A DNA stretch of 64,000 bases, taken from the NCBI GenBank assembly GCA_002269645.1, contig NIVC01003723.1, forward strand, positions 16,559 to 80,558, in the 5' to 3' direction. Positions 9,996-59,289 of the stretch are shown here, piece by piece. Within the stretch, counting starts at the first letter, position 1. Every line of letters starts with the position of its first letter. Under the pieces are notes generated by a model. That model searched no databases. It saw only the letters and a list, made by a program, of their open reading frames with translations, and had not been told where the DNA came from. Source of the DNA: Macrostomum lignano. Its lineage: Eukaryota. Made by a program: the position numbers and the translations under genes.

Positions 9996-10343
9996 ACAGT
10001 GTCTCACCCTCTCTCCGCTGTGTCTCACCCTCTAACCGCTGTGTCTCACCCTCTATTCACTGTGTCTCACCCTCTATTCACTGTGTCTCATCCTCTATCC
10101 ACTGTGTCTCACCCTCTATCCGCTGTGTCTCACCCCTTATCCACTGTGTCTGACCCTCTATCCACTGTGTCTCACCCTCTATCCACTGTGTCTCACCCTC
10201 TATTCACTGTGTCTCACCCTCTATCCACTGTGTCTCACCCTCTATCCACTGTGTCTCACCCTCTATCCACTGTGTCTCACCCTCTATCCACTGTGTCTCA
10301 CCCTCTATCCACTGTGTCTCACCCTCTATTTGCTGTGTCTCAC
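9996..10343. repeat. 21-bp minisatellite (CTCTATCCACTGTGTCTCACC)n, same family as 3500-4445
   Basis: About 16 copies, same orientation, mostly the G>A variant. Confidence 0.95.
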
Positions 10344-10655
10344 ACTCCTATAAAGTTTTCCTACTGCTTTGTCGCACCTCCAATCATGCCCGTGTATGCT
10401 TCCACAGTTTTGCAATCGTTTTAAAAACAGATTAAATAAAAGCGGCACCCGGTCAAAGTAAGTTTCCTCTAGTAATTTGAGAAGTATTTAATTTCATTAA
10501 GTATATTTTTCATAATATTATTTTGCAATGAAATTTTCACAACAGCATTATAACAGCATTAGTAACATTTAATAATCTTATTCTAACATACGGAAAAAAC
10601 TACAGTAAATAAACCAAACACTAGAGCCAAAATCCAAATTTGAAACTGTTCAATA

Positions 10656-13600
10656 TTACTTCTCAACTCCGTTCACTGTCACGACTATGTTTCGAGAACC
10701 TGCGATGGGGCAAATTGGGGTTGATAACGCGAGTGTTGCGAGCAGTATGACACCAAAAAGTAACAGTCAGACTGAAGCTGAAAGTTTCATTAACAATCAA
10801 TCCCAAAACTCAAAGATCCCCAATCCCAAAACTGAAAGATCCCTAATCACAAAACTAAAAGATCCCTAATCCCAAAACTCAAAGATCCCCAATCCCAAAA
10901 CTCAAAGATCCCCAATCCCAAAACTCAAAGATCCCCAATCCCAAAACTCAAAGATCCCTAATCCCAAAACTAAAAGATCCCTAATCCCAAAACTCAAAGA
11001 TCCCCAATCCCAAAACTGAAAGATCCCCAAATCCCAAAACTCAACGATCATGATTCCAAAACAGAAAGATCCCAATGCTAACTTATTGATACCAATCCTA
11101 AAACTCAAAGATCTCCGATTCCAAAAATCAAAGATACCAAAGATCCCAGTGAAAAGCAGATTAGCGAGGCCAGACACAAAGCAGACTCACTTTTATGATT
11201 CCTGTGCTCGCACAACCAAATACCCTGCCAGGTGCCCAGGCACATCTGGCCATTGCTGATGGGTATGGTGAGGCTGCAGCCAAGGATGGCAGCTTTGGCG
11301 TGCGCGGGCATGTCGTCGGGGCCTTCGCACGAGTGCTGATAGCGCTGGTCCTGGAGCGAATGAGTGCATGGGTTGATGACAGGGTCTCTAGATTAATAAC
11401 AGGGTCTCTAGATTGATAACAGGGTCTCTAGATTGATAACAGGGTCTCTAGATTGATAATAGGGCCTCTAGATTGATAACACAGGATCTCTAGATTGATA
11501 ACACAGGATCTCTGGATTGATAACACAGGATCTCTAGATTGATAACACAGGATATCTAGATTGATAACACAGGATCTCTAGATTGATAACACAGGATCTC
11601 TAGATTGATAACACAGGATCTCTAGATTGATAACACAGGATATCTAGATTGATAACACAGGATCTCTAGATTGATAACACATGATCTCTAGATTGATAAT
11701 AGGGCCTCTAGATTGATAACACAGGATCTCTAGATTGATAATAGGGCCTCTAGATTGATAACACAGGATCTCTAGATTGATAATAGGGCCTCTAGATTGA
11801 TAACAGGGTCTCTAGATTGATAACAGGGTCTCTAGATTGATAACAGGGTCTCTAGATTGATAACAGGGTCTCTAGATTGATAACAGGGTCTCTAGATTGA
11901 TAATAGGGCCTCTAGATTGATAACACAGGATCTCTAGATTGCTAACAGGGTCTCCAAATTGATAACACAGGATCTCTAGATTGATAACACAGGATCTCTA
12001 GATTGATAACGGAATCGCTAGATTGCTAACAGGGTCTCCAAATTGATAACACAGGATCTCTAGATTGATAACACAGGATCTCTAGATTGATAACGGAATC
12101 GCTAGATTGCTAACAGGGTCTCCAAATTGATAACACAGGATCTCTAGATTGATAACACAGGATCTCTAGATTGATAACACAGGGTCTCCAAATTGATAAC
12201 ACAGGATCTCTAGATTGATAACACAGGATCTCCAGATTGATAACACAGGATCTCTAGATTGATAACACAGGATCTCTAGATTGATAACACAGGATCTCCA
12301 AATTGATAACACAGGATCTCCAAATTGATAACACAGGATCTCTAGATTGATAACACAGGATCTCTAGATTGATAACACAGGATCTCCAAATTGATAACAC
12401 AGGATCTCCAAATTGATAACACAGGATCTCTAGATTGATAACACAGGATCTCCAAATTGATAACACAGGATCTCCAAATTGATAACACAGGATCTCTAGA
12501 TTGATAACACAAGATCTCTAGATTGATAACACAGGATCTCCAGATTGATAACACAGGATCTCTAGATTGATAACACAGGATCTCTAGATTGATAACACAG
12601 GATCTCCAAATTGATAACACAGGATCTCTAGATTGATAACGGAATCGCTAGATTGCTAACAGGATCTCCAAATTGATAACACAGGATCTCTAGATTGATA
12701 ACACAGGATCTCCAAATTGATAACACAGGATCTCCAAATTGATAACACAGGATCTCTAGATTGATAACACAAGATCTCTAGATTGATAACACAGGATCTC
12801 TAGATTGATAACACAGGATCTCTAGATTGATAACACAGGATCTCTAGATTGATAACACAGGATCTCTAGATTGATAACACAGGATCTCTAGATTGATAAC
12901 GGAATCGCTAGATTGCTAACAGGGTCTCCAAATTGATAACACAGGATCTCTAGATTGATAACACAGGGTCTCCAAATTGATAACACAGGGTCTCCAAATT
13001 GATAACACAGGGTCTCCAAATTGATAACACAGGATCTCTAGATTGATAACACAGGGTCTCCAAATTGATAACACAGGATCTCTAGATTGATAACACAGGG
13101 TCTCCAAATTGATAACACAGGATCTCCAAATTGATAACACAGGATCTCTAGATTGATAACACAGGGTCTCCAAATTGATAACACAGGGTCTCCAGATTGA
13201 TAACACAGGATCTCTAGATTGATAACACAGGGTCTCCAAATTGATAACACAGGGTCTCCAGATTGATAACACAGGGTCTCCAAATTGATAACACAGGGTC
13301 TCCAAATTGATAACACAGGGTCTCCAAATTGATAACACAGGGTCTCCAAATTGATAACACAGGGTCTCCAAATTGATAACACAGGGTCTCCAGATTGATA
13401 ACACAGGATCTCTAGATTGATAACACAGGATCTCCAGATTGATAACACAGGATCTCTAGATTGATAACAGGGTCTCTAGATTGATAACACAGGATCTCTA
13501 GATTGATAACAGGGTCTCCAAATTGATAACACAGGGTCTCCAAATTGATAACACAGGGTCTCCAAATTGATAACACAGGGTCTCCAAATTGATAACAGGG

Positions 13601-16600
13601 TCTCCAAATTGATAACACAGGGTCTCCAAATTGATAACACAGGGTCTCCAAATTGATAACACAGGATCTCTAGATTGATAACACAGGATCTCTAGATTGA
13701 TAACACAGGATCTCCAGATTGATAACACAGGATCTCTAGATTGATAACACAGGATCTCCAGATTGATAACACAGGGTCTCCAAATTGATAACACAGGGTC
13801 TCCAAATTAATAACACAGGATCTCTAGATTGATAACACAGGATCTCCAGATTGATAACACAGGATCTCTAGATTGATAACAGGGTCTCTAGATTGATAAC
13901 ACAGGATCTCTAGATTGATAACAGGGTCTCTAGATTGATAACACAGGGTCTCCAAATTGATAACACAGGATCTCCAAATTGATAACACAGGATCTCCAAA
14001 TTGATAACACAGGATCTCCAAATTGATAACACAGGATCTCCAAATTGATAACACAGGATCTCCAAATTGATAACACAGAATCTCTAGATTGATAACACAG
14101 GATCTCTGGATTGATAACACAGGGTCTCCAAATTGATAACACAGGGTCTCTAGATTGATAACACAGGGTCTCCAAATTGATAACACAGGGTCTCCAAATT
14201 GATAACACAGGGTCTCTAGATTGATAACACAGGGTCTCTAAATTGATAACACAGGATCTCTAGATTGATAACACAGGGTCTCCAAATTGATAACACAGGA
14301 TCTCTAGATTGATAACAGGGTCTCTAGATTGATAACACAGGATCTCTAGATTGATAACACAGGATCTCTAGATTGATAACACAGGATCTCTAGATTGATA
14401 ACGGAATCGCTAGATTGCTAACAGGGTCTCCAAATTGATAACACAGGATCTCTAGATTAATAACACAGGATCTCTAGATTGATAACACAGGATCTCTAGA
14501 TTGATAACGGAATCGCTAGATTGCTAACAGGGTCTCCAAATTGATAACACAGGATCTCCAGATTGATAACACAGGATCTCTAGATTGATAACACAGGATC
14601 TCCAAATTGATAACACAGGATCTCTAGATTGATAACACAGGATCTCTAGATTGATAACACAGGATCTCCAAATTGATAACACAGGATCTCCAAATTGATA
14701 ACACAGGATCTCTAGATTGATAACACAGGATCTCTAGATTGATAACACAGGATCTCTAGATTGATAACACAGGATCTCTAGATTGATAACACAGGATCTC
14801 TAGATTGATAACACAGGATCTCCAAATTGATAACACAGGATCTCTAGATTGATAACACAGGATCTCTAGATTGATAACACAGGATCTCTAGATTGATAAC
14901 ACAGGATCTCTAGATTGATAACACAGGATCTCTAGATTGATAACACAGGATCTCCAAATTGATAACACAGGATCTCCAAATTGATAACACAGGATCTCTA
15001 GATTGATAACACAGGATCTCCAGATTGATAACACAGGATCTCCAGATTGATAACACAGGATCTCTAGATTGATAACACAGGATCTCTAGATTGATAACAC
15101 AGGATCTCCAAATTGATAACACAGGATCTCTAGATTGATAACACAGGGTCTCCAAATTGATAACACAGGATCTCCAAATTGATAACACAGGATCTCCAAA
15201 TTGATAACACAGGATCTCCAAATTGATAACACAGGATCTCTAGATTGCTAACAGGGTCTCCAAATTGATAACACAGGATCTCTAGATTGCTAACAGGGTC
15301 TCCAAATTGATAACACAGGATCTCTAGATTGATAACACAGGATCTCTAGATTGCTAACAGGGTCTCCAAATTGATAACACAGGATCTCTAGATTGATAAC
15401 ACAGGGTCTCCAAATTGATAACACAGGATCTCTAGATTGATAACAGGGTCTCTAGATTGCTAACAGGGTCTCCAAATTAATAACACAGGATCTCTAGATT
15501 GATAACAGGGTCTCCAAATTGATAACACAGGATCTCTAGATTGCTAACAGGGTCTCCAAATTGATAACACAGGATCTCTAGATTGATAACAGGGTCTCTA
15601 GATTGCTAACAGGGTCTCCAAATTGATAACACAGGATCTCTAGATTGATAACACAGGATCTCTAGATTGATAACACAGGATCTCTAGATTGATAGCACAG
15701 GGTCTCTAGATTGCTAACACAGGATCTCTAGATTGATAACACAGGATCTCTAGATTGATAACACAGGATCTCCAGATTGATAACACAGGATCTCTAGATT
15801 GATAACACAGGGTCTCCAAATTGATAACACAGGATCTCTAGATTGATAACACAGGGTCTCTAGATTGATAACACAGGATCTCTAGATTGATAACACAGGA
15901 TCTCCAGATTGATAACACAGGGTCTCTAGATTGATAACACAGGATCTCTAGATTGATAACACAGGATCTCTAGATTGATAACACAGGGTCTCCAAATTGA
16001 TAACACAGGATCTCCAAATTGATAACACAGGATCTCTAGATTGATAACACAGGATCTCTAGATTGATAACACAGGATCTCCAAATTGATAACACAGGATC
16101 TCTAGATTGCTAACACAGGATCTCTAGATTGATAACACAGGATCTCTAGATTGATAACACAGGATCTCTAGATTGATAACACAGGATCTCTAGATTGATA
16201 ACACAGGGTCTCTAGATTGATAACACAGGATCTCTAGATTAATAACACAGGGTCTCCAAATTGATAACACAGGATCTCTAGATTGATAACACAGGATCTC
16301 TAGATTAATAACACAGGATCTCTAGATTGATAACACAGGATCTCTAGATTGATAACACAGGATCTCTAGATTGATAACACAGGGTCTCTAGATTGATAAC
16401 AGGGTCTCCAGAAAGGATTTGAAACAACTAGTTCAGTTGTAAAGAAGGAAGAGTAGAAAGCTTTTTACTTACCTCTGGTACAAGACGATTCAATATCATT
16501 TCCATATCAGTTCTAAAAGTTAGAAAATATAAAAAAATCAGGCACTATCCAACACCACAAACCAAAAGTACACAATATACTCACTTAACGGATGCATCCC

Positions 16601-17052
16601 AGGACTAAAATTGGAATGATGAGAAATGTACTTTAATAAACATTGACGTGTTATAGATTTTCAGTTTTCAGGAACCTCAGGCCACCAGAAGTGCATTTGG
16701 CCCCTATCTTTAAGCGTAAAAAAGATTGATTGACTTACTTCGTTCAAGCACAAACTTGCAGAGGTATGCTGAACTGAAAGTACAGCGTGAAAGTTGATAA
16801 TGACAGGTCATGAAATGCTTGAAATACTTTAGTATATTGAAATAGTTTCAATATTATGAGAACGATCAACTCACGCAACAAGTTGACGGTTCCAATTTTG
16901 ATTTTAGCAATCTCTGGTACAGACTTGATTAGATCCGTGATGTAGTGACAGCCTCGAGATTTGCCTGACACCTTCAGCACCGTCTGGTACCAGACTGTAG
17001 CACCGCTGACTGCGGCGGAGACTTTCGATGAGTTTGACAGAAATAGTGCCGT
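10656..17052 (-). CDS. UPF0047/YjbQ family protein; exons ~17052(or 17005)-16875, 16773-16739, 16604-16585, 16512-16473, 11350-11191, 10699-10656; start unresolved
   Basis: Spliced product ...VWYQTVLKVSGKSRGCHYITD...LQHTSASLCLNESWDASVKTDMEMILNRLVPEDQRYQHSCEGPDDMPAHAKAAILGCSLTIPISNGQMCLGTWQGIWLCEHRNHKSSRNIVVTVNGVEK* has the QHTSASL, H-x-x-EG-x-DDMPAH and LGTWQGI motifs; all junctions are phase-consistent. Confidence 0.9.
10790..11150. repeat. 23-bp repeat (CCCAAAACTCAAAGATCCCCAAT)n in the last YjbQ intron
   Basis: Direct tandem copies, degenerate toward both ends. Confidence 0.85.
11378..16410. repeat. ~5-kb minisatellite, 22-bp unit (TAGATTGATAACACAGGATCTC) with 20-bp and CCAAA variants, filling a YjbQ intron
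   Basis: Roughly 230 copies occupying nearly the whole intron 11351-16472. Confidence 0.97.
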
Positions 17053-17169
17053 CTTGCTTTAGTTGCTTGTATTACTGGTATCTTTAAAACTTGTCGTTCT
17101 TAATTTTTAATATCGCTTTGTTTTAGTTTTTGTATAAAACACAGGGTCTCTGGGGGAAGTGGACTGTCA

Positions 17170-17540
17170 GGAGAGACTGAGAAATGTCAGGAAAGGCTTA
17201 AAGATGCGGGAAAGGCTTAGAAATGTCAGGAAAGGCTTAGAGACATCAGGAGAGGCTTAGAGATGTCAGGAGAGGCTTAGAGATGTCAGAAGAGGCTTAG
17301 AGATGTCAGGAGAGGCTCAGAGATGTCAGGAGAGACTTAGAGATGTCAGGAGAGGCTTAGAGATGTCAGGAGAGACTTAGAGATGTCAGAAATGCTTAGA
17401 GGTGTCAAGACAGGCTGAGAAACGTCAGGACAGACTTAAAAATGTCAGGAAAGGCTGAGAGGTGTCAGGAGAGGCTTATAGATAACAGGAGAGTTCTAGA
17501 GATGTCAAGAAAATCTTACAGATGTCAGGAGAGGCTTGTA
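17170..17540. repeat. 20-bp degenerate repeat (AGATGTCAGGAGAGGCTTAG)n
   Basis: About 18 copies upstream of the first identified YjbQ coding exon. Confidence 0.85.
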
Positions 17541-18369
17541 ATATTACCTAAATAACGCTGTAAACTGTCTTTGCGACAAAAATGATTTAATTCGAAAAAA
17601 ACAGGAAACTCACAATCTCACAATATGACAACATTTATGATGATTTGGCCACACGCGATGAACTGCGCATGGCGGTGCTCCAATAATATACATCAGTAGC
17701 AGTAGCATATATATTTCAACCACATATCAATATTACAAGTAGACAAAGCTTTATTTCAAGCAGTTGAAGCAAAAATAGGGATTATACTTGTACTATTAAT
17801 TTTCTGAAACACTCACGAGGCTCTAAATTAATTTAATATCTTTAATGACCCAAGCGAACTTACCAAACACCGGATACTGTATGTATTACATTCTCTGGAA
17901 GGCATATCGTATAATAATTGTACATTATTAAGATGGACCCTAAACTGCAGCAGACAATGCGTCTCGTGCTGTACATTAAACGCCCAAAACCGAAGAAGGA
18001 AGGTTGCATAACAAATATAACAAAATACACGGCAAAATAATCATGCATAGGGAAAGAGCGGAGAGACAGAGGGACATTTTGAAAGCTGAAAGAAACTCAA
18101 TTAAAATCAAACACTTAAAGCTGGATAAAACAAATATTTGATTTGAAACAACATACTACTCAATATCGATTTTTATCGAGTAGTTAATAGGTATTTTTAT
18201 AGCAAAATATATGCACCGAGTTTTGGCATTGAAGAGTCAACTGAATACGCATCAAGCATCAGGGAGAGGAGAGAGAGAGAAGATGGGGAGGAGAGGAGAG
18301 AGAGGAGAGATGCTCCCGCACACCTCCACCCAGTGGAAGTAGCTACAGTACTGGGTTGCTAGGGGGGGG

Positions 18370-18560
18370 GGCCGTAGCCCAGCGGTAGCGCAGCTGCTCT
18401 GGTGTGCCGCGACCCAGGCTCGATTCCAAGTGCAGCCACATTAATTTGGGGCTGAATTGGAATCTCGGCTTGGCTCGCTCGTGCAATTAACGGCCTTGAG
18501 AGCCAACCCCCCCCCCCCCCAAGGCGCAGTGAAGTGTACATGCCTAACAATAAATAAAGT
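18370..18560 (+). mobile_element. tRNA-derived SINE-like element
   Basis: Pol III A box TAGCCCAGCGG (18375-18385) and B box GGCTCGATTCC (18417-18427) at tRNA-like spacing, followed by a unique body and an AATAAATAAA tail; no clean cloverleaf. Confidence 0.6.
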
Positions 18561-19159
18561 TAGGGCCGCTGTACACTCCTGTGGAGTGTGTGCCTGCGTA
18601 ACGTATCCGCGCGCTTGTATGCCTGCTCAGGGGAGTCGGCGGAATGGGCAGTAATGCCTCTCGCCGGTTGTGTGCCAATGACGCTTAAATTGCGCCAGGG
18701 TGCACACAACCCCCCTGCCTCTAATAAAAAAAACTGGGTTGCTATCACCGATATGTATCGTTAATAAGTTTATACACTCCGGAGTGAAAATTGGACTTTT
18801 TAGACTTGACAACAAAGGCTGGGGGACAATGAAATAATTAAAGATACAACAGAAAGCACGCAAAAAATTAATTTAACCGTAAAAGCCTCAAAGTCATGCA
18901 GCAGAGAAGGCACAGATACTAGAATGTTTAAATATGGTACTAGCGAAAGATGCGTTTATCTACTCCGTTTTCAGTAGCATAACTAGAATTTTTGTGTTTT
19001 TTTAAACTTGGACTTTCTATAACCAGACTCATGCAACTTGGCATACTTCAGCATATACTTCAGCAGTGTTTTCCTATTCAATTGTGTAAACTGAGCAAAA
19101 GTACTTATTCTAGAATCTGTGCAGAAAATCAACAAAGTTAGTAACAATATACATGTAGG

Positions 19160-22100
19160 TCACAGATCTGGTTGACTCGAATCGGTTGGCCGCAGAGCCA
19201 CAACGGTGCCAGCGGCGACTGTAACGCCCCGGTCTCTGAGCATGAACTTGCCTAACTCTCTACTATTAGTATAGACGTCGAGGCATAGCGGCCGGTCCAA
19301 TTGTAGTTCAACTTCGGCGCAGCAATTGCTGAGTATGTAGCGCGGATGCCGGCGCTCCAGCTGACCAGTGGATTTGTTAATCTGGGCTAGTAGGCGGATT
19401 ATCGTGACCGGGACTGACACGGCTTGCTGGTGGAATATTGCTTGGTAGCCCTGGATAGATAATAGTCGGTAAAGTAATTATAAACTATAAATCACCGCTT
19501 TGTAAAAATACGTGATTTGCCAACCTCTCCGGAGGGGGGATTGGAATCTAGTCCACTATACTAAATCTTATCAATTCAGAAATACGTGATTTGCCAACCT
19601 CCCCAGAGGGGGGATTGGAATCTAGTCCACTATACTAAATCTTATCAATGCAGAAATACGTGATTTGCCAACCTCTCCGGAGGGGGGATTGGAATCTAGT
19701 CCACTATACTAAATCTTATCAATTCAGAAATACGTGATTTGCCAACCTCCCCAGAGGGGGGATTGGAATCTAGTCCACTATACTAAATCTTATCAATGCA
19801 GAAATACGTGATTTGCCAACCTCTCCGGAGGGGGGTTGGAATCTAGTCTAATATACTAAAGTTGAGTTTGTTTGTTTGTTTGTTTGCTTGTAACAGAAAA
19901 TCTTGCGAACGGAATGACCGATTTTCTCCGTTTTTGCACCATTAGATGGCAAATTGTCCGGAATCGGTACACGTATTTTTAATAAGCAATCCAAATTAAA
20001 GAGGCCTCTCAATTGTCAGAAAACAGGTTTTTGCCCATCTCGCTAATGTATTTTTTCGGCAGTGAGAGCTTGCAAACGGTTTTGGCCATAGATTATAATG
20101 CTAATAGCTGTAGGCTGCTTGGTTTTTATGTAGCCCACTGCTTCCTTTCCTTCTTTCTTTTCTAAATTTGATGTTATCAAAACGATGAGAGCTAGCCTAG
20201 AGGTGAACAAACTGAACTGCTAAATGCAGCGACGATGGTTCGAATTTTCATAGAGTATAATTTTTTTAATTAAAGCTTTTCAACGTCAGGAAAACTAAAA
20301 GACTTTTTAAAAAGAAGCGTCATGTAAAAATCATAGAAGCGTCATGTAAACAATCATAGAAGCGTCATGTAAACAATCATTGAAGCGTCAATTAAAAATC
20401 ATTGAAGCGTCATTTAAAAATCATAAAAGCGTTATTTAAAAAAATCATAAAAGCGTCATGTAAAAAATCGTAGAAGCGCCATGTAAACAATCATAGAAGC
20501 GTCATGTAAAAAATCATAGAAGCGTCATGTAAAAAATCATAGAAGCGTCATGTAAACAATCATAGAAGCATCATGTAAAAAATCATTGAAGCGTCATTTA
20601 CAAATCATAGAAGCGTCATGTAAACAATCATATAAGCGTCATGTAAACAATCATAGAAGCGTCATGTAAACAATCATAGAAGCGTCATGTAAAAAATCAT
20701 AGAAGCGTCATGTAAAAAATCATAGAAGCGTCATGTAAACAATCATAGAAGCATCATGTAAAAAATCATTGAAGCGTCATTTACAAATCATAGAAGCGTC
20801 ATGTAAACAATCATAGAAGCGTCATGTAAACAATCATAGAAGCGTCACGTAAAAAATCGTAGAAGCGTCATGTAAACAATCATAGAAGCGTCATGTAAAA
20901 AGTCATAGAAGCGTCATGTAAAAAATCATAGTAGCGTCATGTAAAAAATCATAGAAGCGTCATGTAAAAAATCGTAGAAGCGCCATGTAAACAATCATAT
21001 AAGCGTCATGTAAACAATCATAGAAGCGTCATTTAAAAAATTAAGAAGCATCAGGGTACAATAAAAGAAGCGTCATGTCAGACATGAAGGGTGTCATGTA
21101 AAAATTTAATGCAGCTATAATGCTGTGCTGGGGAGAAAAACTGAGACGTAAAGGCTCTCAGAGAATAACTGAGATTACGGGGGGGGGGTTCTGAGATGTC
21201 AAAGCAAAAGTCAGAAGCTACTTCAAAGTTCATGTACTTTACTCAATTTTTTATTGCATTCTTTGTTGGCTCGCCACGGGGGGGCGCTGATAGAAGAAGA
21301 TTCATGTAAAAAATAAAAGTAGCACTATGTATACATAAAAGAAAAGTCTTGTCGAAGTTAAAAGATTCATTTGGGAATTGCTACAATGTCAAAGCTTGGT
21401 GGAAATTGTTATAGTGCTGTGATTCTTAAAGAAGGAATCACTAAAATGTCAAGGCTTAGGGGAGAAGAATTGCTGAGATTTCAAGGCTTTAGGTTGGGTT
21501 AAAGTTAGGTTTAGGTCAGGTGTGGGTTGAGGGTTATATTTTTATCGGGTTTCAAGGTTAACAGAATAACAGGGGATTTTTTAGATTTCAAGGTTTATGG
21601 GGGCCATCGCTGACATGTCAAGGCTTACGGGGGGAATAGCTGAGATGTCAAGGCTCACGGGGGTATAAATGAGATTTCAAGGCTAAAGTCAGAAGCTACA
21701 TGAAGTTTATTGAAAACTTTTTATTACATTATTTGATGCCTCCTCAGGGGAGGGATCGCTGATAAAAAAAGCGTAATGTAAAAAATAAAAGAAGCTTCAT
21801 GTCGAAGTTAAGAGATTCATTTGGGAATCCCTACGATGTCGAGGCTTGCAGGGAATCGCTATAATGCTGTAGTGCTATAATGACTCTTAGAGAGAATTAC
21901 TGAAATTTCAATGCTTTAGGGTTAGGTTAGGGTTAGGGTTAGGGTTAGGGTTAGGGTAGGCTAGGGTTAGGGTTAGAAGGTTGACAGATATTTTTAGATT
22001 TCCAAGGCTTATTGGGGGCATTGCTGAGATGTCAAGGGGGGAAGTTGATATGTTAAAGCTTGTGGGGGGGGGAATTACTGGCATGTCAAGGCTTACAAGG

Positions 22101-25100
22101 TTTGACAGGAGATTTTTTAAGATTTCAAGGATACATGTAGCTTATTAAAAAAACGTGTATTGCATTTTTTTGGCTCCCCAACGGGGGGCGTAGATTGCTA
22201 GTCCACTATACTAAATCTTTTCAATTCAGAAATACGTGATTTGCCAACCTCTTCGGAGGGGGGGGGTTGGAATCTAGTCCACTATACTAAATCTTATCAA
22301 TTCAGAAATACGTGATTTGCCAACATCTCCGGAGGGGGGATTGGAATCTAGTCCACTATACTGAATCTTATCAATTCAGAAATACGTGATTTGCCAACCT
22401 CTCCGGAGGGGGGATTGGAATCTAGTTCACTATACTAAATCTTATCAATTCAGAAATACGTGATTTGCCAACCTCTCCGGAGGGAGGATTGGAATCTAGT
22501 TCACTATACTAAATCTTATCAATTCAGAAATACGTGATTTGCCAACCTCTCCGGAGGGGGGATTGGAATCTAGTCCACTATACTAAATCTTATCAATGCA
22601 GAAATACGTGATTTGCCAACCTCTCCGGAGGGGGGATTGGATTCTAGTCCACTATACTAAATCTTATCAATTCAGAAATACGTGATTTGCCAACCTCTCC
22701 GGAGGGGGGATTGGAATCTAGTTCACTATACTAAATCTTATCAATGCAGAAATACGTGATTTGCCAACCTCTCCGGAGGGGGGATTGGAATCTAGTCCAC
22801 TATACTAAATCTTATCAATGCAGAAATACGTGATTTGCCAACCTCTCCGGAGGGGGGGTTGGAATCTAGTCCACTATACTAAATCTTATCAATTCAGAAA
22901 TACGTGATTTGCCAACCTCTCCGGAGGGGGGTTGGAATCTAGTCCACTATACTAAATCTTATCAATTCTGAAATACGTGATTTGCCAACCTCTCCGGAGG
23001 GGGGGTTGGAATCTAGTCCACTATACTAAATCTTATCAATTCAGAAATACGTGATTTGCCAACCTCTCCGGAGGGGGGATTGGAATCTAGTCCACTATAC
23101 TAAATCTTATCAATTCAGAAATACGTGATTTGCCAACCTCTCCGGAGGGGGGATTGGAATCTAGTCCACTATACTAAATCTTATCAATGCAGAAATACGT
23201 GATTTGCCAACCTCTCCGGAGGGGGGATTGGAATCTAGTCCACTATACTAAATCTTATCAATGCAGAAATACGTGATTTGCCAACCTCTCCGGAGGGGGG
23301 GGGGTTGGAATCTAGTCCACTATACTAAATCTTATCAATTCAGAAATACGTGATTTGCCAACCTCTCCGGAGGGGGGTTGGAATCTAGTCCAGAATACTA
23401 AAATATGAAGAGAATACATTTTTCTTCTGTGAAAATCATCAAAATTGTTATCAAAAGTCATCAAAATTGTCTTTAATAAGATTCTACTATTTATCGACTT
23501 ACTTTATGTCTGAAGCTTTTGTTAACCATGTATATTAAAACCTGTAAACATGTATATTAGTATAATGTATATTATATTAAGATAAGAAAACAAAGAAAAA
23601 TTCACCTTAGTAACCGGCTGGCTAACATTTATCAGAAGCAGTTTAGCTCTCAGCCGATTAGTACACGGACAGGGCATGGTCACGGAGGACAGCACCGACC
23701 CGGGCCCGAAGTGAGCCGGATCGACGCCACCCCCGGAAACGCTGATAGTGCCGGAATCGCCGGCAAAGATGGCCGAACCAGCAGCCGCGGAAGCATCCTG
23801 ACCGCTAGATGTCACAGCTTTAACTGTTATCCGTTGATTAGCAGGCAATAACAATAATTTATGACCTGGAGCCGCGTAGCCCGACAGTGCGTTGCCGAAG
23901 CAGGTCACCGCGCCGGAGCCGCCGGTGCCGCGACCGCCGGTGGATACCTCCGAGATGTAGAAGCGTAGCGGCTTGTCCACCGATCGGGGTGGCGGAGTTA
24001 AACGATCGATCAGGTCAACCAGTGTTGGTCCTGATGCGTACCTTTTGGGGTGGCGATTAGAAATTATGGGAAGTATTAATCATATTTGTTAATCATATCA
24101 ACATAGCTTGTTCAGATTATTATTTGTCTCCAGTGCAATATGTGATTTGACTAGAAAGCAGACTACTTACTGAATCTACTGGCTCAACTTACCAAATAGA
24201 TTATTCAATAGTATATACTAACTGAACTGAATCTATAAACCAGATTAACGAATACAAAACCCTGGCTACCGAATCAACAAATCAGGCTACCGAAACTACC
24301 AAGCGACTCACCAGGGACACAGTTCAGCTGACAAGGGCTTATTGAGATTGGCCCCCTCCAGGCCAGACACGGGACAATAGCTAACGCAGTCCGGCTTAAA
24401 CCCAACGGATTTCAAATAGACGCCAAGTTTGTCGCGAATTTCAGCGAATCGAGTCTCGGACCATTTGGCCGTGTCCATCTTGTTGATGGCCACCACCAGC
24501 TGGCCGATGCCCAGACCCCTGGCTAGCAGGGCATGCTCTCGGGTCTGGCCGCCCTGGTCGAAGCCGCTTTCAAATTCGCCTCTGGTGGCGTTGATCACCA
24601 GCAGGGCGGCGTCCGCGGCCATGGCGCCGCTGATCATGTTCGGTATGAAGTCCTTGTGACCGGGGCAATCTAGAAGATTAACTAGCCGGTGAGGCGTGCT
24701 CAGCTGACTACGAGCGACGTCCATTGTGACGCCGCGTTGGCGCTCCTCCTCGCTTTCGTCTAGGACCCAGGCGAATTGGAAGCTGGGCTTGCCGGCTTTG
24801 CGGCACTCCTTTAATGCATTTGGCAAGGGGAAGGCGATACTAAGAGTGAGGATAATAGGGGTCTGAGTGGCTCGCCCAGCAACTGAGGATCTGGGAGGCT
24901 GGCCCAGCAACTGAGGATCTGGGAGGCTGGCCCAGCAACTGAGGATCTGGGAGGCTGGCCCAGCAACTGAGGATCTGGGAGGCTGGCCCAGCAACTGAGG
25001 ATCTGGGAGGCTGGCCCAGCAACTGAGGATCTGGGAGGCTGGCCCAGCAACTGAGAATCTGGGAGGCTGGCCCAGCAACTGAGAATCTGGGAGGCTGGCC

Positions 25101-29800: not shown

Positions 29801-32800
29801 CCTTCTCTACCCCCAGGGTTTCTCAATTATGGCTGCTACCCCTCCTCTACCCCCAGGGTTTCTCAATTATGGCTGCTACCCCTCCTCTACCCCCAGGGTT
29901 TCTCAATTATGGCTGCTACCCCTCCTCTACCCCCAGGGTTTCTCAATTATGGCTGCTACCCCCTCCTCTACCCCAGGGTTTCTCAATTATGGCTGCTACC
30001 CCTCCTCTACCCCCAGGGTTTCTCAATTATGGCTGCTACCCCTCCTCTACCCAGGGTTTCTCAATTATGGCTGCTACCCCTCCTCTACCCCAGGGTTTCT
30101 CAATTATGGCTGCTACCCCTCCTCTACCCCAGGGTTTCTCAATTATGGCTGCTACCCCTTCTCTACCCCAGGGTTTCTCAAGTATGGCTGCTACCCCTCC
30201 TCTACCCCAGGGTTTCTCAATTATGGCTGCTACCCCTTCTCTACCCCAGGGTTTCTCAATTATGGCTGCTACCCCTCCTCTACCCCAGGGTTTCTCAATT
30301 ATGGCTGCTACCCCTCCTCTACCCCAGGGTTTCTCAATTATGGCTGCTACCCCTCCTCTACCCCCAGGGTTTCTCAATTATGGCTGCTACCCCTCCTCTA
30401 CCCCAGGGTTTCTCAATTATGGCTGCTACCCCTCCTCTACCCCAGGGTTTCTCAATTATGGCTGCTACCCCTTCTCTACCCCAGGGTTTCTCAATTATGG
30501 CTGCTACCCCTTCTCTACCCCAGGGTTTCTCAAGTATGGCTGCTACCCCTCCTCTACCCCAGGGTTTCTCAATTATGGCTGCTACCCCTCCTCTACCCCA
30601 GGGTTTCTCAAGTATGGCTGCTACCCCTTCTCTACCCCCAGGGTTTCTCAATTATGGCTGCTACCCCTCCTCTACCCCAGGGTTTCTCAATTATGGCTGC
30701 TACCCCCTCCTCTACCCCCAGGGTTTTTCAATTATGGCTGCTACCCCCTTCTCTACCCCCAGGGTTTCTCAATTATGGCTGCTACCCCTCCTCTACCCCA
30801 GGGTTTCTCAATTATGGCTGCTACCCCTCCTCTACCCCCAGGGTTTCTCAATTATGGCTGCTACCCTCTTCTCTACCCCCAGGGTTTCTCAATTATGGCT
30901 GCTACCCCTCCTCTACCCCCAGGGTTTCTCAATTATGGCTGCTACCCCCTTCTCTACCCCCAGGGTTTCTCAATTATGGCTGCTACCCCTTCTCTACCCC
31001 AGGGTTTCTCAATTATGGCTGCTACCCCTTCTCTACCCCAGGGTTTCTCAATTATGGCTGCTACCCCTCCTCTACCCCAGGGTTTCTCAATTATGGCTGC
31101 TACCCCCTTCTCTACCCCAGGGTTTCTCAATTATGGCTGCTACCCCTTCTCTACCCCAGGGTTTCTCAATTATGGCTGCTACCCCCTTCTCTACCCCAGG
31201 GTTTCTCAATTATGGCTGCTACCCCTCCTCTACCCCCAGGGTTCCTCAATTGTGGCTGCTACCCCCTCCTCTACCCCCAGGGTTCCTCAATTATGACTGC
31301 TACCCCCTCCTCTACCCCCAGGGTTCCTCAATTATGGCTGCTACCCCCTCCTCTACCCCCAGGGTTCCTCAATTATGGCTGCTACCCCCTCCTCTACCCC
31401 CAGGGTTTTTCAATTGAATGAATGAGTGATTTTAATAAACGTGTCATACTCTATTGTTTTACATTTCCAATATAAACCTACATGTAATAAAAGTGTTTTC
31501 TATAGAATGAAGAACACATGCCAGATAAAACGAATGAATTTTAACCCAGGGTCATCAAGCTTGCGATAAACAGGAGAGCCAAGAAGATCAGAGCCCATTA
31601 GAACAGTTACAAGCTGTGTAAACATAGATAGAAAAACCCATGTTATAGAATATAGCTAGCTACTATCCGAAATGCACCTGTTTATAAATTTCTGCATCAA
31701 ATTAAGATTAAACAAACTGCAAGTTCCAGTGCTAAAAAAATGTTTACTTTTAATATATAGCAAACCCAATGTCAGACCCTAGCGTCAATTTACTTTAAAC
31801 TATAGAAATCTATTTTCTCACTCAACTTATCCACTAGATTCTTAGAACAGATCAAGAGCGTTTCTTAGAACAGGTCAAGGACGATTTTTAGAACAGGTCA
31901 AAGGCGAATCTTAGAACAGGTCAAGGATGATTCTTAGAACAGGTCAAGAGCGTTTCTTAGAACAGGTCAAGGACGATTTTTAGAACAGGTCAAAGGCGAA
32001 TCTTAGAACAGGTCAAGGATGATTCTTAGAACAGGTCAATGACGATTCTTAGAACAGGTCAATGACGATTCTTAGAACAGGTCAAAGGCGATTCTTAGAA
32101 CAGGTCAAGGGCGAATCATAGAACAGGTCAAGGGCGATTATTAGAACAGGTCAAGGGCGATTCTTAGAACAGGTCAAAGGCGATTCTTAGAACAGGTCAA
32201 AGGCGATTCTTAGAACAGGTCAAAGGCGATTCTTAGAACAGGTCAAGGGCGATTCTTAGAACAGGTAAAAGGCGATTCTTAGAACAGGTCAAGGGCGATT
32301 ATTAGAACAGGTCAAGGGCGATTCTTAGAACAGGTCAAAAGAATTTGAACAGAATAACAAACCAAACAAGCCGGCACTCACGCCTGCCTTCCTCGTATGA
32401 GATTCCAGGCTCGCAGGGTGCAATCGTCCCCAATAGACAGAGCCAGCCGACCCGACTGGTGCACTCCCAGAGATCTGACGCCCTCCTTATGCCGACGCAT
32501 TGTCCGAAGGCACTCCCAGCCGCGGCAAGACCAAATCGCTAAGCTCTTATCGCTGCTGCAGCTTAGCAGATGAGAATCGCCAAAGAATGCCAGATCCGTA
32601 ACTCCGCCTTCGTGCTGCATCAACTGGCCCAGCTTGCGCAGGCTAGACAGATTGTACAGACTAATCTGTTCGTCTCGAGAGCCGCTGGCTAGCCGACCAT
32701 TGGGAGACACAGCTAAGCAAGCTATCGCCTTCAGGTGCGCCGACGCCTCGGTGAATAGAGGCCGAAGTGTACGCGAAAGCGACGAAGATTGATCAGACGG

Positions 32801-32878
32801 AGTGTCTGCTGACAGATTGCTGACTGAGTAACCGGCAAGGCCACCCTCTAGGGTGCCGACCACCAGGACTGGGGCGGA
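26888..32878 (-). CDS. PAK1IP1: PAK1-interacting protein 1 / Mak11 WD40 ribosome-biogenesis factor; exons 32878-32382, 29552-29133, 27161-26888; no in-frame ATG found
   Basis: LVVGTLE...AHLKAIACLAVS...ASGSRDEQISLYNL...QHEGGVTDLAF...SCSSDKSLAIW...WECLRTMRRHKEGV...HQSGRLALSIGDDCTLRAWNLIRGR follows the PAK1IP1 pattern; basic C-terminal tail; junctions are phase-consistent. Confidence 0.88.
27480..29020. repeat. 37-bp minisatellite (AGTTCCTAAAAACCTAAACTAAAACAGCTACTTTATT)n in a PAK1IP1 intron
   Basis: About 41 copies. Confidence 0.96.
29620..31415. repeat. 39-41-bp minisatellite (CCCCAGGGTTTCTCAATTATGGCTGCTACCCCTCCTCTA)n in a PAK1IP1 intron
   Basis: About 44 copies; source of the three 500-600-aa pseudo-ORFs. 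Confidence 0.96.
31840..32340. repeat. 23-bp minisatellite (GATTCTTAGAACAGGTCAAGGGC)n in a PAK1IP1 intron
   Basis: About 21 copies. Confidence 0.93.
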
Positions 32879-32964
32879 CTTGTCACGTGACAGCAATTTT
32901 AGGAGCAATAAAATTAGTTTAATGGGAGATAATGCACTGCTGGATAAGGAGATTGACTTAGGAA

Positions 32965-34257: not shown

Positions 34258-35894
34258 CTAAGCCGGCAGCACTTCAGTCTTGAAGTCCTTAGTAACCAGG
34301 ATGAGCAGGCTGCCGGACTGCGGCACGTCGGCGGCCCCGCTGACCCAGTTGGCAAGCAGGTCGGCCACAAAGCTCAGCGGAGTCCACTCGCTGAGGCCGG
34401 CCTCGCCCATGGCCCGCCTGTTAGCCGGGGTGTCCAGCGTGACGGGCAGGATAGCCAGGGCGCGGGCGCCACTGGGTAGGCCCGAGTTTTTCTCGGCAAG
34501 TGAGCGAACCTGAGGTAAAAATAGGCGAGGTTTGATACAAAATGTGAATAAGAACACATTGAATCAATCGGAAAGATGAGATAAAGGTTGCGGATTGAAG
34601 AGAAGGAATCCGATCAAGAGAAGAAAATGAAGGGATTAAATGAAGGTCATGAAGCGATCCGATGAAAGGAATGAAGGGATCAGATGAATGGAATTAAGGG
34701 ATCAGGTGAAGGGAATTAAGGGATCAGGTGAAGGGAATTAAGGGATCAGATGAATGAATGGAATGAAGGGATCAGATGAATGGAATTAAGGGATCAGATG
34801 AAGGGAATGAAGGGATCAGATGAATGAATGGAATGAAGGGATCAGATGAATGAAATTAAGGGATCAGGTGAAGGGAATGAAGGGATCAGGTGAAGAGAAT
34901 TAAGGGATCAGGTGAATGAAGGGAATGAAGGGATCAGATGAAGGGAATGAAGGGATCAGGTGAAGGGAATGAAGGGATCAGATGAAGGGAATGAAGGGAT
35001 CAGATGAAGGGAATGAAGGGATCAGATGAATGAATGGAATGAAGGGATCAGGTGAAGGGAATGAAGGGATCAGATGAATGAATGGATCAAATGAAGGGAA
35101 TGAAGGGATCAGATGAATGAATGGAATGAAGGGATCAGATGAATGAATGGAATGAAGGGATCAGATGAAGGAAATAAAGGGATCGAATGGCAGGAAAGGA
35201 ATAAAGGGATCGAATGGCAGGAAAGGAATAAAGGGATCGAATGGCAGGAAAGGAATAAAGGGATCGAATGGCAGGAAAGGAATAAAGGGATCGAATGGCA
35301 GGAAAGGAATAAAGGAATCTGATGAAAGGTCATAAGGGATAAAGGGCACAAGTGGAATGAAGGGACTGGACTGAAATACTAAAAATGCAGTTGGCACACA
35401 GACAGACGAGGGCCGCTCACCAGATGATGCACGGCAGCCTTGGCCATGCCGTAGCCGATCATGCCGGGCGTCGGTCCCAACGCCGGCTGGGCGCCGGTGA
35501 GCAGCAGCAGAGAGTCCTTGGAGTCCAGCAGGTGCTTGGCGGCCAGAGAAGCGGCAATAACGCTAGTCCAGACCGACTGCTTCAGCACCAAGTCGCAGTT
35601 GGCGACGAAATTGTCGCTGCCGGCGTCTCCGCCGGCCCAGCCGCCGGCAACGCAGATCACGGCGTCGAGTTTAGCGCCGTCCAACACTTTGGCAACGTCG
35701 GTGACTACGGCGGCGTGTTGATCGGTTAGACTGCCGCTAGAAGGCGACACGGCTACGCTAGCATCGGCGTCGGGATTGTCAGCGCCGATGTCTACGCTGC
35801 ACACCCAGCAGCCCAGCTGTTTGAATTTCATTACGCAGGCTGAGCCAAGGGCGCCGCGACCGCCGTACACGAGGATTCGTTTGGTTGAGGACAT
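34258..35894 (-). CDS. QDPR: Dihydropteridine reductase; exons 35894-35421 and 34509-34258
   Basis: RILVYGGRGALGSACV, DAVICVAGGWAGG, LKQSVWTS, LTGAQPALGPTPGMIGYGMAKAAVHHL, ILPVTLDTPANR and WTPLSFVA are characteristic QDPR motifs. Confidence 0.95.
34665..35335. repeat. Two adjacent purine-rich minisatellites in the QDPR intron (21-25-bp GAATGAAGGGATCAGATGAA; 27-bp AAAGGGATCGAATGGCAGGAAAGGAAT)
   Basis: Tandem copies; the unit switches near 35170. Confidence 0.9.
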
Positions 35895-35994
35895 GTTGCT
35901 TTTGGTTTGCTTGAATTGGGGGGAATCGCTGCTGTTAGTGCCGCCAATGCACTGCAATTAGGTTGATTGTAGGACTGTCACTGCCACCCATCAT

Positions 35995-57290: not shown

Positions 57291-57523
57291 AAGTAGTAAA
57301 TCAATAAAATCGGGGTTGTCGTAGTCTTCTGTCAGACAAATGGAATATATTGACTCTTAATTTTTAATATCTCTCAATCAAAACACATTTATATGGAGGC
57401 TGTTCAACTTTTCAATCTCAGAGATATCTCGAATGTCCACTGAAAACCAAAGCAGATGTCAATCATGTAATACCAAGGAGGGCAAGGCGAATCAAAACCA
57501 AAGCAAAGATGTGTTCATTTTTA

Positions 57524-58140: not shown

Positions 58141-58339
58141 AACCAAATTGATTTGCAGTATTCTTGTTACTTATTTTATTTTAATTGCTGCAAAATTTCA
58201 TTATAGCTATCTCCTTTATCGATTCGGTGTAAAAAGTACAGATACATTTGACCGCAATATTTCTTATCAAAATTTTGATTTGTTTCTTCCCTGTCTCCAC
58301 ATATTCTATTCTTTGTGTGATTAAACTTTTCCATAATTT

Positions 58340-58606: not shown

Positions 58607-58615
58607 TTTTAACGC

Positions 58616-59040: not shown

Positions 59041-59289
59041 CTCTACGCGTGTCTAGGCTTGCACTGAAGACAATAGCTCCCTCTTTCCAATCCCATGAAC
59101 CTGCTTGAATCTTTATTTTTTTTATGTTCTACCACTATTCCTAGAGTATCGTAACTCGATAACTCGAGTATTGCCTGCTTTAATATTGTTAATGGCATAT
59201 GTCCTTCTGCCTTAGCTGCTAATAAAGTTAACAGGAGGCTTATATCATATATCATATTATATCATAATATCATGCTACTACTACTGTCT

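What the first reader, a model, noticed from the sequence alone, without database searches (positions are those of the whole stretch)
19506..23406. Tandem array of ~74-bp 'minimal Helitrons' with a 2.36-kb Helitron-like element in exact register
Seen: each of 20 full units begins TC (TCCACTATACTAAA) and ends with an imperfect hairpin (CCAACCTCTCC|GGAGGGGGGATTGG) followed by AATCTAG, so every junction reads CTAG|TC. The long element starts exactly at a junction (19847, TCTAATATACTAAA, nearly the same 5' end) and ends with its own hairpin plus CTAG at 22201, where the short units resume. The array finishes with another 5'-end-like TCCAGAATACTAAA. Established: Helitrons have 5'-TC, a subterminal hairpin and 3'-CTRR, and transpose by rolling-circle replication. 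Inference: the satellite is a concatemer of an extremely small non-autonomous Helitron made of little more than two ends, and elements of this family target each other's ends. This would be a direct Helitron-to-satellite route inside a housekeeping-gene intron.
Basis: partly seen in the sequence, partly recalled or inferred. Interest (0 to 1): 0.85.

Follow-up and report, generated by a model that had tools for sequence, protein, structure and literature searches.

The report
Helitron-like 74-bp tandem array
One intron of an HBS1/eEF1A-like GTPase gene is almost filled by 20 head-to-tail copies of a 74-bp repeat that looks like the two fused ends of a rolling-circle (Helitron-type) transposon, split at a repeat boundary by a 2.36-kb relative. 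It is a small example of a transposon-to-satellite route that is already known, and Helitron membership could not be proven from this window.

Summary
There are 20 full 74-bp units (19552-19846 and 22202-23388) plus two partial units. Every unit ends in CTAG. 17 begin TC and 3 begin TT. A 2,355-bp element (L, 19847-22201) sits exactly between two units, with no duplication or loss.

The unit equals L's first 14 nt (12/14 identical) fused to L's last ~60 nt. L has a 17-nt GC hairpin 12 nt before its CTAG-3' end, which is the geometry published for Helitrons. The CTAG|TC joint has the form known from Helitron circles and from head-to-tail Helitrons in maize and bat.

- The array's outer ends are not TC and CTAG. 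It starts inside the right-end part and stops after a left-end 14-mer.
- The unit hairpin is no more stable than shuffled sequence.
- A 148-bp dimer was duplicated in situ.
- 30% of the window is tandem arrays, and 14 of 26 arrays carry a CT(N)AG core.
- No other copy and no Rep/helicase ORF was found in the window, and no related locus could be retrieved.

Best reading: a Helitron-derived head-to-tail seed, expanded by host recombination. This is a new variant of a known kind and of moderate interest.

The parts
19506..19551 (+). Leading partial unit, unit positions 29-74 (right-end part only), abutting unique intron sequence.
   Evidence: The 55-65 nt to its left are not significantly unit-like (186 of 500 shuffles score as well).
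19552..19846 (+). Four full 74-bp units arranged as a B-A-B-A 148-bp dimer repeat.
   Evidence: The two dimers are 147/148 identical.
19847..22201 (+). Long element L (2,355 bp). It is Helitron-like, non-coding, and in exact register with the array.
   Evidence: No other copy in the window.
19847..19860 (+). L left-end 14-mer TCTAATATACTAAA, 12/14 identical to the unit's TCCACTATACTAAA.
19866..19886 (+). (GTTT)5 microsatellite just inside L's 5' end.
   Evidence: Read directly from the sequence.
20313..21078 (+). Internal 23-bp tandem repeat (AGAAGCGTCATGTAAAAAATCAT), about 33 copies.
21079..22201 (+). Three homologous modules: M1 tail 21079-21300, M2 21301-21770, M3 21771-22201. Each ends in a TTTTTATTGCATT...GC-hairpin right-end-like segment. 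TTAGGG-like runs lie at 21490-21525 and 21916-21976.
22140..22201 (+). L right end, aligning with unit positions ~16-74. It contains an A7/T7 hairpin, then a GC hairpin at 22173-22189 (7-bp stem, 3-nt loop), then 12 nt ending in CTAG (22198-22201).
22202..23388 (+). Sixteen full 74-bp units (73-77 nt).
   Evidence: They are the same sequence population as the left block.
23389..23402 (+). Trailing partial unit TCCAGAATACTAAA (left-end 14-mer, 12/14), followed by unique intron sequence.
   Evidence: The right flank is not unit-like.
19160..19450 (-). Last coding exon of the host HBS1/eEF1A-like GTPase gene (domain III, including the stop codon). The acceptor AG is at 19451-19452.
   Evidence: Pfam GTP-eEF1A_C, E = 5.6e-23.
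23606..23998 (-). Upstream exon of the same gene. It lies between the GTP_EFTU exon and the domain-III exon and has no Pfam match. The donor GTGAAT starts at 23605. The exon's 5' limit was not mapped.
   Evidence: The neighbouring exons match GTP_EFTU.

Best explanation
This is a Helitron-superfamily-derived composite sitting antisense in a gene intron.

L is a non-autonomous, Helitron-like element. It has a 5'-TC end with a 14-nt left-end motif, no coding capacity, internal tandem repeats and three tandem right-end modules. It finishes with a GC hairpin 12 nt before CTAG-3'.

The 74-bp unit is an internal-deletion relative of an L-like element: the 14-nt left end fused to the ~60-nt right end. 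It can equally be read as an amplified right-end/left-end joint.

The proposed history has three steps, all inferred:
1. The locus was seeded by a transposase-made head-to-tail structure with a CTAG|TC joint, as in Helitron circles and tandem Helitrons.
2. Most copies were then gained by the host's own unequal exchange or replication slippage, which is very active in this genome, and the array was homogenised.
3. L entered, or was flanked by units, through end-directed joining at a CTAG|TC joint without a target-site duplication.

Shown: the anatomy, the homology of the ends, the exact register, the in-situ dimer duplication and the homogeneity of units across L.

Inferred: Helitron ancestry, transposase involvement and the order of events.
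For: Homology of ends:
- Unit = L[1-14] + L[last ~62]. The 5' end is 12/14 identical. The 3' end-anchored score is 25, against 14.9 +/- 2.9 in shuffles (12 of 2000).
- Both right ends keep two hairpins despite about 40% sequence divergence.

Helitron geometry:
- L's hairpin at 22173-22189 is 17 nt long and lies 12 nt from CTAG-3'. Published Helitron geometry is a 16-20-bp palindrome 10-15 bp upstream of the 3' terminus (PMC2267711), or 19 bp at 11 nt in Helraiser (PMC4778049).
- L's 5' end, TCTAATATACTAAAG, resembles the maize consensus TC[TC][CA]TA[CT]TA...AAG (PMC2267711) but does not match it exactly.
- L carries three tandem right-end modules.

Insertion into the array:
- Mean differences between units are 2.5 and 2.8 within the two blocks and 2.9 between them. 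Unit 19626 is identical to unit 23165.
- L's ends are 14-40% diverged from the units. L is therefore a distinct family member placed in, or flanked by, a young array exactly at the joint, with no TSD.

Precedent:
- G/T head-to-tail joints without the host A occur in maize (two different Helitrons, consecutive insertions) and in bat (PMC2267711, section 8).
- Helraiser transposase makes RTS-LTS joints and cleaves them precisely (PMC4778049, PMC5876387).

Host-driven growth:
- The B-A-B-A dimers are 147/148 identical.
- 30.2% of the window is tandem arrays.
Against: - No second copy of the unit or of L exists in 64 kb.
- No Rep/helicase domain was found in the ORFs tested. This scan was not exhaustive.
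- No related locus was retrievable from any collection.
- L lies at G|T, not at the canonical A|T.
- The array's outer ends are not element termini.
- Hairpin energies are unremarkable: unit z = -0.14, L's 3' 62 nt z = -1.3.
- CT(N)AG is common in this window's arrays (14 of 26, against 4.1 expected), so the CTAG alone is weak evidence.
- Only one locus was seen.
Confidence: 0.5

Rival explanations
1. A 74-bp 'minimal Helitron' is itself mobile. The whole array is a rolling-circle concatemer made by the transposase and integrated as such, and family members routinely target each other's ends.
For: - Every joint is CTAG|T(C/T).
- The unit contains only end sequences.
- L sits in exact register without a TSD.
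- Helraiser circles carry this joint and are transposition donors. The cleavage determinants lie within 40 nt of each end, so about 74-80 nt could suffice (PMC4778049, PMC5876387).
Against: - An integrated concatemer should start with TC after a host A and end with CTAG before a host T. Instead the array starts at unit position ~29 and ends 14 nt past a joint, and the flanks are not degenerate units.
- The near-identical 148-bp dimer duplication is most simply local.
- No monomeric copy exists in the window.
- Published rolling-circle arrays usually lose the 3' end (PMC12628747), unlike here.
Confidence: 0.15
2. An ordinary satellite with no Helitron connection. TC, CTAG and the weak hairpin are coincidences of a repeat whose phase was chosen after the fact. 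L is an old repeat unit that 'ballooned' through internal insertions and minisatellite growth between unit positions 14 and 15, and then escaped homogenisation.
For: - 30% of the window is tandem arrays.
- 14 of 26 arrays have a CT(N)AG core, against 4.1 +/- 1.8 expected.
- The unit hairpin is no better than shuffles.
- The outer ends have arbitrary phase.
- There is a single locus.
- L's 'register' follows automatically if L is a modified unit.
- The difference between 86% (5') and ~62% (3') identity is only marginally significant (P about 0.05, my calculation).
Against: - L's right end belongs to a module repeated three times inside L, so it is part of L's body and not a leftover unit half.
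- Units on both sides of L are near-identical while L's ends are strongly diverged.
- L's hairpin-12 nt-CTAG and TC-TATA-rich-AAG ends match published Helitron geometry (PMC2267711, PMC4778049).
- The unit shows no significant similarity to the other arrays in the window.
Confidence: 0.25
3. L is a Helentron-associated element (HINE/DINE-1 type) with subterminal inverted repeats, a microsatellite, central tandem repeats and a 3' palindrome. The 74-bp array is an expansion of its repeat content.
For: - (GTTT)5 microsatellite near the 5' end.
- Large central tandem repeats.
- A 20-nt inverted repeat (19968-19987 / 22140-22159, 95%) whose 3' arm lies 42 nt from the 3' end, and a palindrome 12 nt from the 3' end. 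The published ranges are 38-60 nt and 8-35 nt (PMC4067079).
Against: - The 5' arm is 121 nt from the 5' end, not 2-4 nt (PMC4067079).
- The inverted repeat is not clearly beyond chance: shuffles give 15.1 +/- 2.2 nt with a maximum of 23.
- The termini are TC/CTAG, not T-rich, and there is no TT target.
- The 74-bp units consist of the element's ends, not its central repeats.
Confidence: 0.07
4. An assembly artefact: a mis-joined or mis-expanded repeat in a long-read assembly.
For: Tandem arrays are error-prone in assemblies. Only one assembly was seen.
Against: The units carry many distinct, patterned variants. The flanking exons and splice sites are intact and the joins are clean.
Confidence: 0.03

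Closest known systems
Head-to-tail Helitrons with a G/T (CTAG|TC) joint: maize AF466202 pair and Myotis Helibat tandem repeats (PMC2267711, section 8, citing Pritham & Feschotte 2007)
   Same: - The 3' CTAG of one element abuts the 5' TC of the next, with no host A between them.
- In maize the two elements differ and arrived by consecutive insertions, like L next to the units.
- No TSD.
   Different: - Here the repeated element is only 74 bp and is present 20 times.
- The outer ends of the block are not element termini.
- No presence/absence polymorphism and no autonomous partner could be examined.
Helraiser circle RTS-LTS junction (PMC4778049, PMC5876387)
   Same: The same joint chemistry in form: CTAG-3' joined directly to 5'-TC. 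The joint is a precise cleavage site for the transposase, which gives a mechanism for both multimerisation and end-directed entry.
   Different: That joint is extrachromosomal and experimental. Nothing here shows circles or an active transposase. The Helraiser palindrome is 19 bp at 11 nt. The unit's inverted repeat is imperfect and lies 7 nt from the end.
Rolling-circle-amplified tandem arrays of truncated Helitrons in plant centromeres (Xiong, Dooner & Du 2016, as summarised in PMC12628747), and Helitron-associated centromeric arrays in Meloidogyne (PMC13404089)
   Same: Helitron-derived sequences repeated in tandem from several to hundreds of times, which is a Helitron-to-satellite route.
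   Different: - Those arrays typically have many 5' ends and a single 3' end, because the terminator is lost. Here every unit keeps the hairpin and CTAG.
- The monomer is far smaller.
- The locus is a euchromatic intron, not a centromere.
HINE / DINE-1 / Cg_HINE non-autonomous Helentrons carrying satellite-like central repeats (PMC4067079, PMC7492417)
   Same: L has a microsatellite near its 5' end, a long central tandem repeat and a 3' palindrome. The overall theme is a transposon supplying a satellite.
   Different: - The defining 5' subTIR position and the T-rich/TT ends are not met.
- The amplified 74-mer is built from the element's ends, not from central repeats.

Membership tests
Canonical Helitron (HLE1) | 5'-TC terminus | tested here: met
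   L begins TC. 17 of 20 units begin TC and 3 begin TT.
Canonical Helitron (HLE1) | 3'-CTRR (usually CTAG) terminus | tested here: met
   L and all 20 units end in CTAG. However, CT(N)AG is common in this window's arrays.
Canonical Helitron (HLE1) | 16-20-nt palindrome 10-15 nt upstream of the 3' end (PMC2267711; Helraiser 19 bp at 11 nt, PMC4778049) | tested here: inconclusive
   L meets it in geometry: hairpin 22173-22189, 17 nt long, 12 nt from the end. The unit does not clearly meet it: an imperfect 25-nt inverted repeat 7 nt from the end. Energies are not better than shuffles (z = -1.3 and -0.14).
Canonical Helitron (HLE1) | No terminal inverted repeats and no target-site duplication | tested here: met
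   The ends are not inverted repeats. Complete units flank L, so nothing was duplicated or lost.
Canonical Helitron (HLE1) | Insertion between host A and T | tested here: not met
   L lies between G (of CTAG) and T (of TC), which is the known head-to-tail exception (PMC2267711). The composite's outer borders are at unit positions ~29 and 14, not at element ends.
Canonical Helitron (HLE1) | Multiple dispersed copies sharing the same termini | not testable with these tools
   There are none in the 64-kb window.
Canonical Helitron (HLE1) | Autonomous partner encoding Rep/helicase with the same termini | not testable with these tools
   No Rep/Hel domain was found in the window ORFs scanned. The scan was not exhaustive and 64 kb says little about the genome.
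Helentron / HINE (HLE2) | 12-15-bp subTIRs: the 5' one 2-4 nt from the 5' end, the 3' one 38-60 nt from the 3' end (PMC4067079) | tested here: not met
   The 3' arm is 42 nt from the 3' end, but the 5' arm is 121 nt from the 5' end. The inverted repeat's length is within reach of shuffles (15.1 +/- 2.2, maximum 23).
Helentron / HINE (HLE2) | T-rich termini and insertion into TT | tested here: not met
   The termini are TC and CTAG. The flanks are G and T.
Helentron / HINE (HLE2) | 3' palindrome 8-35 nt from the end; microsatellite and central tandem repeats often present | tested here: met
   Hairpin 12 nt from the end. (GTTT)5 and a 23-bp repeat of about 33 copies.
Rolling-circle-amplified Helitron tandem arrays (Xiong et al. 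2016 type) | Perfect head-to-tail joints; many 5' ends with a single or few 3' ends (inner copies 3'-truncated) | tested here: not met
   The joints are perfect, but every unit keeps its 3' hairpin and CTAG. The block begins with a 5'-truncated copy (description in PMC12628747 and PMC7492417).

The most novel reading that the evidence does not exclude
A 74-bp element consisting only of a 14-nt left end and a ~60-nt right end is a functional minimal Helitron substrate. The family's RepHel multimerises it by rolling-circle replication and uses CTAG|TC joints as preferred integration sites. Satellites would then be born directly from transposase activity, even inside an expressed gene's intron.
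Probability: 0.15. Interest if true: 0.7.

Novelty: new variant of a known kind. Interest (0 to 1): 0.42.

Why it matters
If the Helitron ancestry holds, this locus is an unusually clear small-scale case of a transposon turning into a satellite. The monomer is reduced to the sequences a rolling-circle transposase needs at the two ends. A larger family member sits precisely at one joint.

That would set an upper bound of about 74 nt on the cis-requirements of this family. It would also supply natural joint substrates for biochemical tests. Finally, it would show that such arrays can take over about 94% of an intron in an essential-type gene while leaving 55 nt upstream of the acceptor and 203 nt downstream of the donor untouched.

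If the ancestry does not hold, this is one more of the very many minisatellites in an array-prone genome.

Tried and rejected
Searches for related sequence, all unproductive:
1. A metagenome scan with a 20-mer of the unit gave 3 hits. All are chance matches with no flanking similarity.
2. A genome-contig scan with the joint 23-mer and a viral-contig scan with the 20-mer gave 0 hits.
3. Exact-protein look-ups of three window ORFs, aimed at fetching the same locus from other assemblies, found nothing on record.
4. Protein searches to place the organism failed. The best hit to the GTPase exon was 65% identical. The transposase-like ORF had one hit at 49%. The organism remains unidentified, so no orthologous or empty site could be compared.
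5. A literature search for six sub-strings of the unit and of L gave 0 papers.

Ideas tested and dropped:
6. That the array flanks are degenerate units. Rejected: for the left flank 186 of 500 shuffles score as well, and the right flank scores worse than shuffles.
7. That the unit is related to the other minisatellites in the window. The best z-scores are 2.5-2.7 among 24 comparisons, which is not significant.
8. That the 20-bp array at 17165-17537 is related to L's ~30-bp internal repeat. 52 of 500 shuffles score as well, so it is not significant.
9. That L is a HINE. The inverted repeat is weak and its 5' arm is misplaced.
10. That the 5'-motif-like site at 16826-16841 (minus strand) marks another element. 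It lies near apparent exons (assigned by eye) of another gene, and no hairpin-CTAG end was seen in the two stretches read (16340-16900 and 10300-11460), the 22-bp array between them not being read.

Other negative checks: Rfam found nothing in the window, and ARAGORN found no tRNA at 18200-18800.

Full report
**What is there**

Tandem Repeats Finder reports a period-74 array in two blocks. The first is 19506-19860 (4.8 copies, 95% matches). The second is 22198-23402 (16.2 copies, 96% matches).

Cutting at CTAG|T gives the following layout:
- a 46-nt partial unit (19506-19551, unit positions 29-74);
- four full units (19552-19846);
- a 2,355-bp element, L (19847-22201);
- sixteen full units (22202-23388);
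- a 14-nt partial unit, TCCAGAATACTAAA (23389-23402).

All 20 full units end in CTAG. 17 start TCCAC and 3 start TTCAC. Complete units flank L on both sides, so nothing was duplicated or lost at its borders.

Three joints read CTAG|TT. The unit hairpin is weak. The array as a whole does not start with TC or end with CTAG.

**Context**

The window is eukaryotic and very rich in tandem arrays. TRF returns 68 rows, and the distinct arrays cover 30.2% of the 64 kb.

The block lies antisense in an intron of an HBS1/eEF1A-like GTPase gene on the minus strand:
- Exons match GTP_EFTU (E = 1.8e-34) and GTP-eEF1A_C (E = 5.6e-23).
- The donor GTGAAT follows exon base 23606.
- The acceptor AG precedes exon base 19450.
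- The stop codon is at 19160-19162.

The intron is 4,155 bp, and the array plus L take up 3,897 bp of it. That leaves 55 nt next to the acceptor and 203 nt next to the donor. These flanks are not detectably degenerate units.

**Anatomy of the unit and of L**

The unit's first 14 nt match L's first 14 nt at 12/14 positions. Unit positions ~16-74 align end-to-end with L's last ~62 nt. That alignment scores 25, against 14.9 +/- 2.9 for shuffles, and 12 of 2000 shuffles reach it. The 74-mer is thus a 14-nt left end fused to a ~60-nt right end of an L-like element.

L contains, in order:
- (GTTT)5 just inside the 5' end;
- about 450 bp of unique sequence;
- a 23-bp repeat of about 33 copies;
- three homologous ~450-bp modules, each ending in a right-end-like segment with a GC hairpin;
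- TTAGGG-like runs.

L's terminal hairpin (22173-22189) has a 7-bp stem and a 3-nt loop and lies 12 nt before CTAG-3'. This is the published Helitron geometry. PMC2267711 gives a 16-20-bp palindrome 10-15 bp upstream of the 3' terminus. PMC4778049 gives 19 bp at 11 nt for Helraiser.

Both right ends also keep an upstream A/T hairpin. In the unit it is AAAT-ACGTG-ATTT. In L it is A7...T7.

Energetically none of these hairpins stands out. The unit gives z = -0.14 and L's last 62 nt give z = -1.3.

L's 5' end, TCTAATATACTAAAG, resembles the maize Helitron 5' consensus TC[TC][CA]TA[CT]TA[CA][TC]...AAG (PMC2267711) but does not match it exactly. From memory, the bat Helibat 5' end is similarly TC-TATA-rich. 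That is a lead, not a test.

**Is L an insertion?**

Units left and right of L form one population. Mean pairwise differences are 2.5 and 2.8 within the two blocks and 2.9 between them. Unit 19626 is identical to unit 23165. L's ends, by contrast, differ from the units by 14% at the 5' end and about 40% at the 3' end.

L's right end is also part of a module repeated three times inside L. It therefore belongs to L's body and is not a leftover half-unit.

The simplest reading is that a distinct family member and a young homogeneous array became joined exactly at a CTAG|TC joint, without a target-site duplication. Two orders of events fit: L entered the array, or units accumulated at both of L's ends. 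The data cannot separate them.

**What argues against the full 'concatemer of mini-Helitrons' model**

1. An integrated TC...CTAG multimer should begin with TC after a host A and end with CTAG before a host T. Here the left border is a right-end fragment and the right border is a left-end 14-mer. The block looks more like amplified joints (right end + left end) than like whole elements.
2. The left block is a B-A-B-A arrangement whose two 148-bp dimers are 147/148 identical. This is a recent local duplication of the kind host recombination or replication slippage produces.
3. The genome makes arrays everywhere. 14 of the 26 distinct arrays in the window carry a CT(N)AG core in their unit, against 4.1 +/- 1.8 expected, and 0 of 1000 shuffles reach 14. 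The CTAG on its own is therefore weak evidence. The 74-mer itself is not significantly similar to the other arrays.
4. No other copy of the unit or of L exists in the window. No Rep/helicase domain was seen in the ORFs scanned.

**Related sequences**

I could not obtain any. The details are listed in the tried-and-rejected field. Those checks are dispersed monomers, A|T targets, an autonomous partner and circles.

**Comparison with what is known**

- *Head-to-tail Helitrons.* The CTAG|TC joint without an intervening host A is a described peculiarity of head-to-tail Helitrons. In maize, two different Helitrons arrived at such a G/T joint by consecutive insertions. In Myotis, such joints were read as tandem repeats (PMC2267711, section 8).
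- *Helraiser.* Its transposase makes exactly this joint in circles and cleaves it precisely on the plus strand. The cleavage determinants lie within 40 nt of each end (PMC4778049, PMC5876387).
- *Tandem Helitron arrays.* Arrays attributed to rolling-circle amplification are known in plants, usually with many 5' ends and one 3' end (Xiong et al. 2016, via PMC12628747).
- *Helitron/Helentron-borne repeats that become satellites.* These are documented in oysters, Drosophila and Meloidogyne (PMC7492417, PMC4067079, PMC13404089).

The route is therefore known. The unusual features here are the tiny monomer made only of the two ends, the retention of the 3' terminator in every copy, and a larger relative sitting at a joint.

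A HINE/Helentron assignment fails on the 5' subTIR position and on the T-rich/TT ends. Its 20-nt inverted repeat is also within reach of shuffles.

**Verdict**

My best explanation (confidence 0.5) is a Helitron-derived head-to-tail seed, later expanded and homogenised by host mechanisms, with end-directed joining of L.

The rivals are:
- a non-Helitron satellite with a ballooned unit (0.25);
- a HINE (0.07);
- an assembly artefact (0.03).

I rate the novelty as a new variant of a known kind. Interest is moderate at 0.42. It would rise substantially if genome-wide data showed mobile 74-bp monomers and a RepHel partner with the same ends.

Noticed in passing
whole window (arrays listed): 14 of 26 distinct tandem arrays carry a palindromic CT(N)AG core in their unit, against 4.1 +/- 1.8 expected; 0 of 1000 shuffles reach 14. 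By eye, several units share an extended GGGAT(T)CT(N)AGATTG-like core: arrays 3-53, 1317-1880, 2345-2608, 10798-11135, 11379-16401, 31837-32338 and 63712-63796. Some arrays belong to the same family, so the counts are not fully independent. The cause is unknown.
   Followed up: partly
whole window: 30.2% of the 64 kb is tandem arrays, mostly with 20-40-bp periods. At least two (the 74-bp array near 19451 and the 22-bp array near 11379) run to within about 40-55 nt of an apparent 3' splice site; the others were not mapped against genes.
   Followed up: partly
window 21490-21525 and 21916-21976: Interstitial telomere-like (TTAGGG)n runs lie inside two of L's three modules.
   Followed up: no
window 16826-16841 (minus strand): TTCAATATACTAAAGT is 14/16 identical to L's 5' end. 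It lies near apparent exons (assigned by eye) of another gene, upstream in minus orientation of the 5-kb 22-bp array (11379-16401). No hairpin-CTAG end was seen in the two stretches read (16340-16900 and 10300-11460); the array between them was not read. It may be chance, since the expected number of such near-matches is about 0.03-0.3.
   Followed up: partly
window ~18360-18520 (+): By eye, a tRNA-like head with A-box and B-box-like motifs (GGGGCCGTAGCCCAGCGGTAGC...GGCTCGATTCCAAG), flanked by G- and C-runs. This suggests a tRNA-derived SINE. ARAGORN calls no tRNA there.
   Followed up: partly
window 52171-53635 (minus strand): A P-element/THAP9-like transposase remnant. It has a weak TNP-like RNase H N-terminal domain match (E = 1.8e-4, below the Pfam cut-off) and a 297-aa ORF with a single database relative at 49% identity. 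Reverse-transcriptase-like fragments appear at 46879-47241 (by eye) and at 5754-6149 (weak RT_RNaseH_2 match).
   Followed up: partly
window 55995-59128 (minus strand): A run of AT-rich ORFs (91-218 aa) with no Pfam match at E <= 0.01 apart from a faint F5/8 type C hit. They are probably another degraded mobile element of unknown type.
   Followed up: partly
window 917-2474 (+), 32378-32908 (-), 35379-35957 (-), 11165-11375 (-): Neighbouring host exons. By eye these are xanthine dehydrogenase/aldehyde oxidase-like, dihydropteridine-reductase-like and YjbQ-like. One WD40-repeat exon is confirmed by Pfam. This is a gene-dense region with repeat-filled introns.
   Followed up: no
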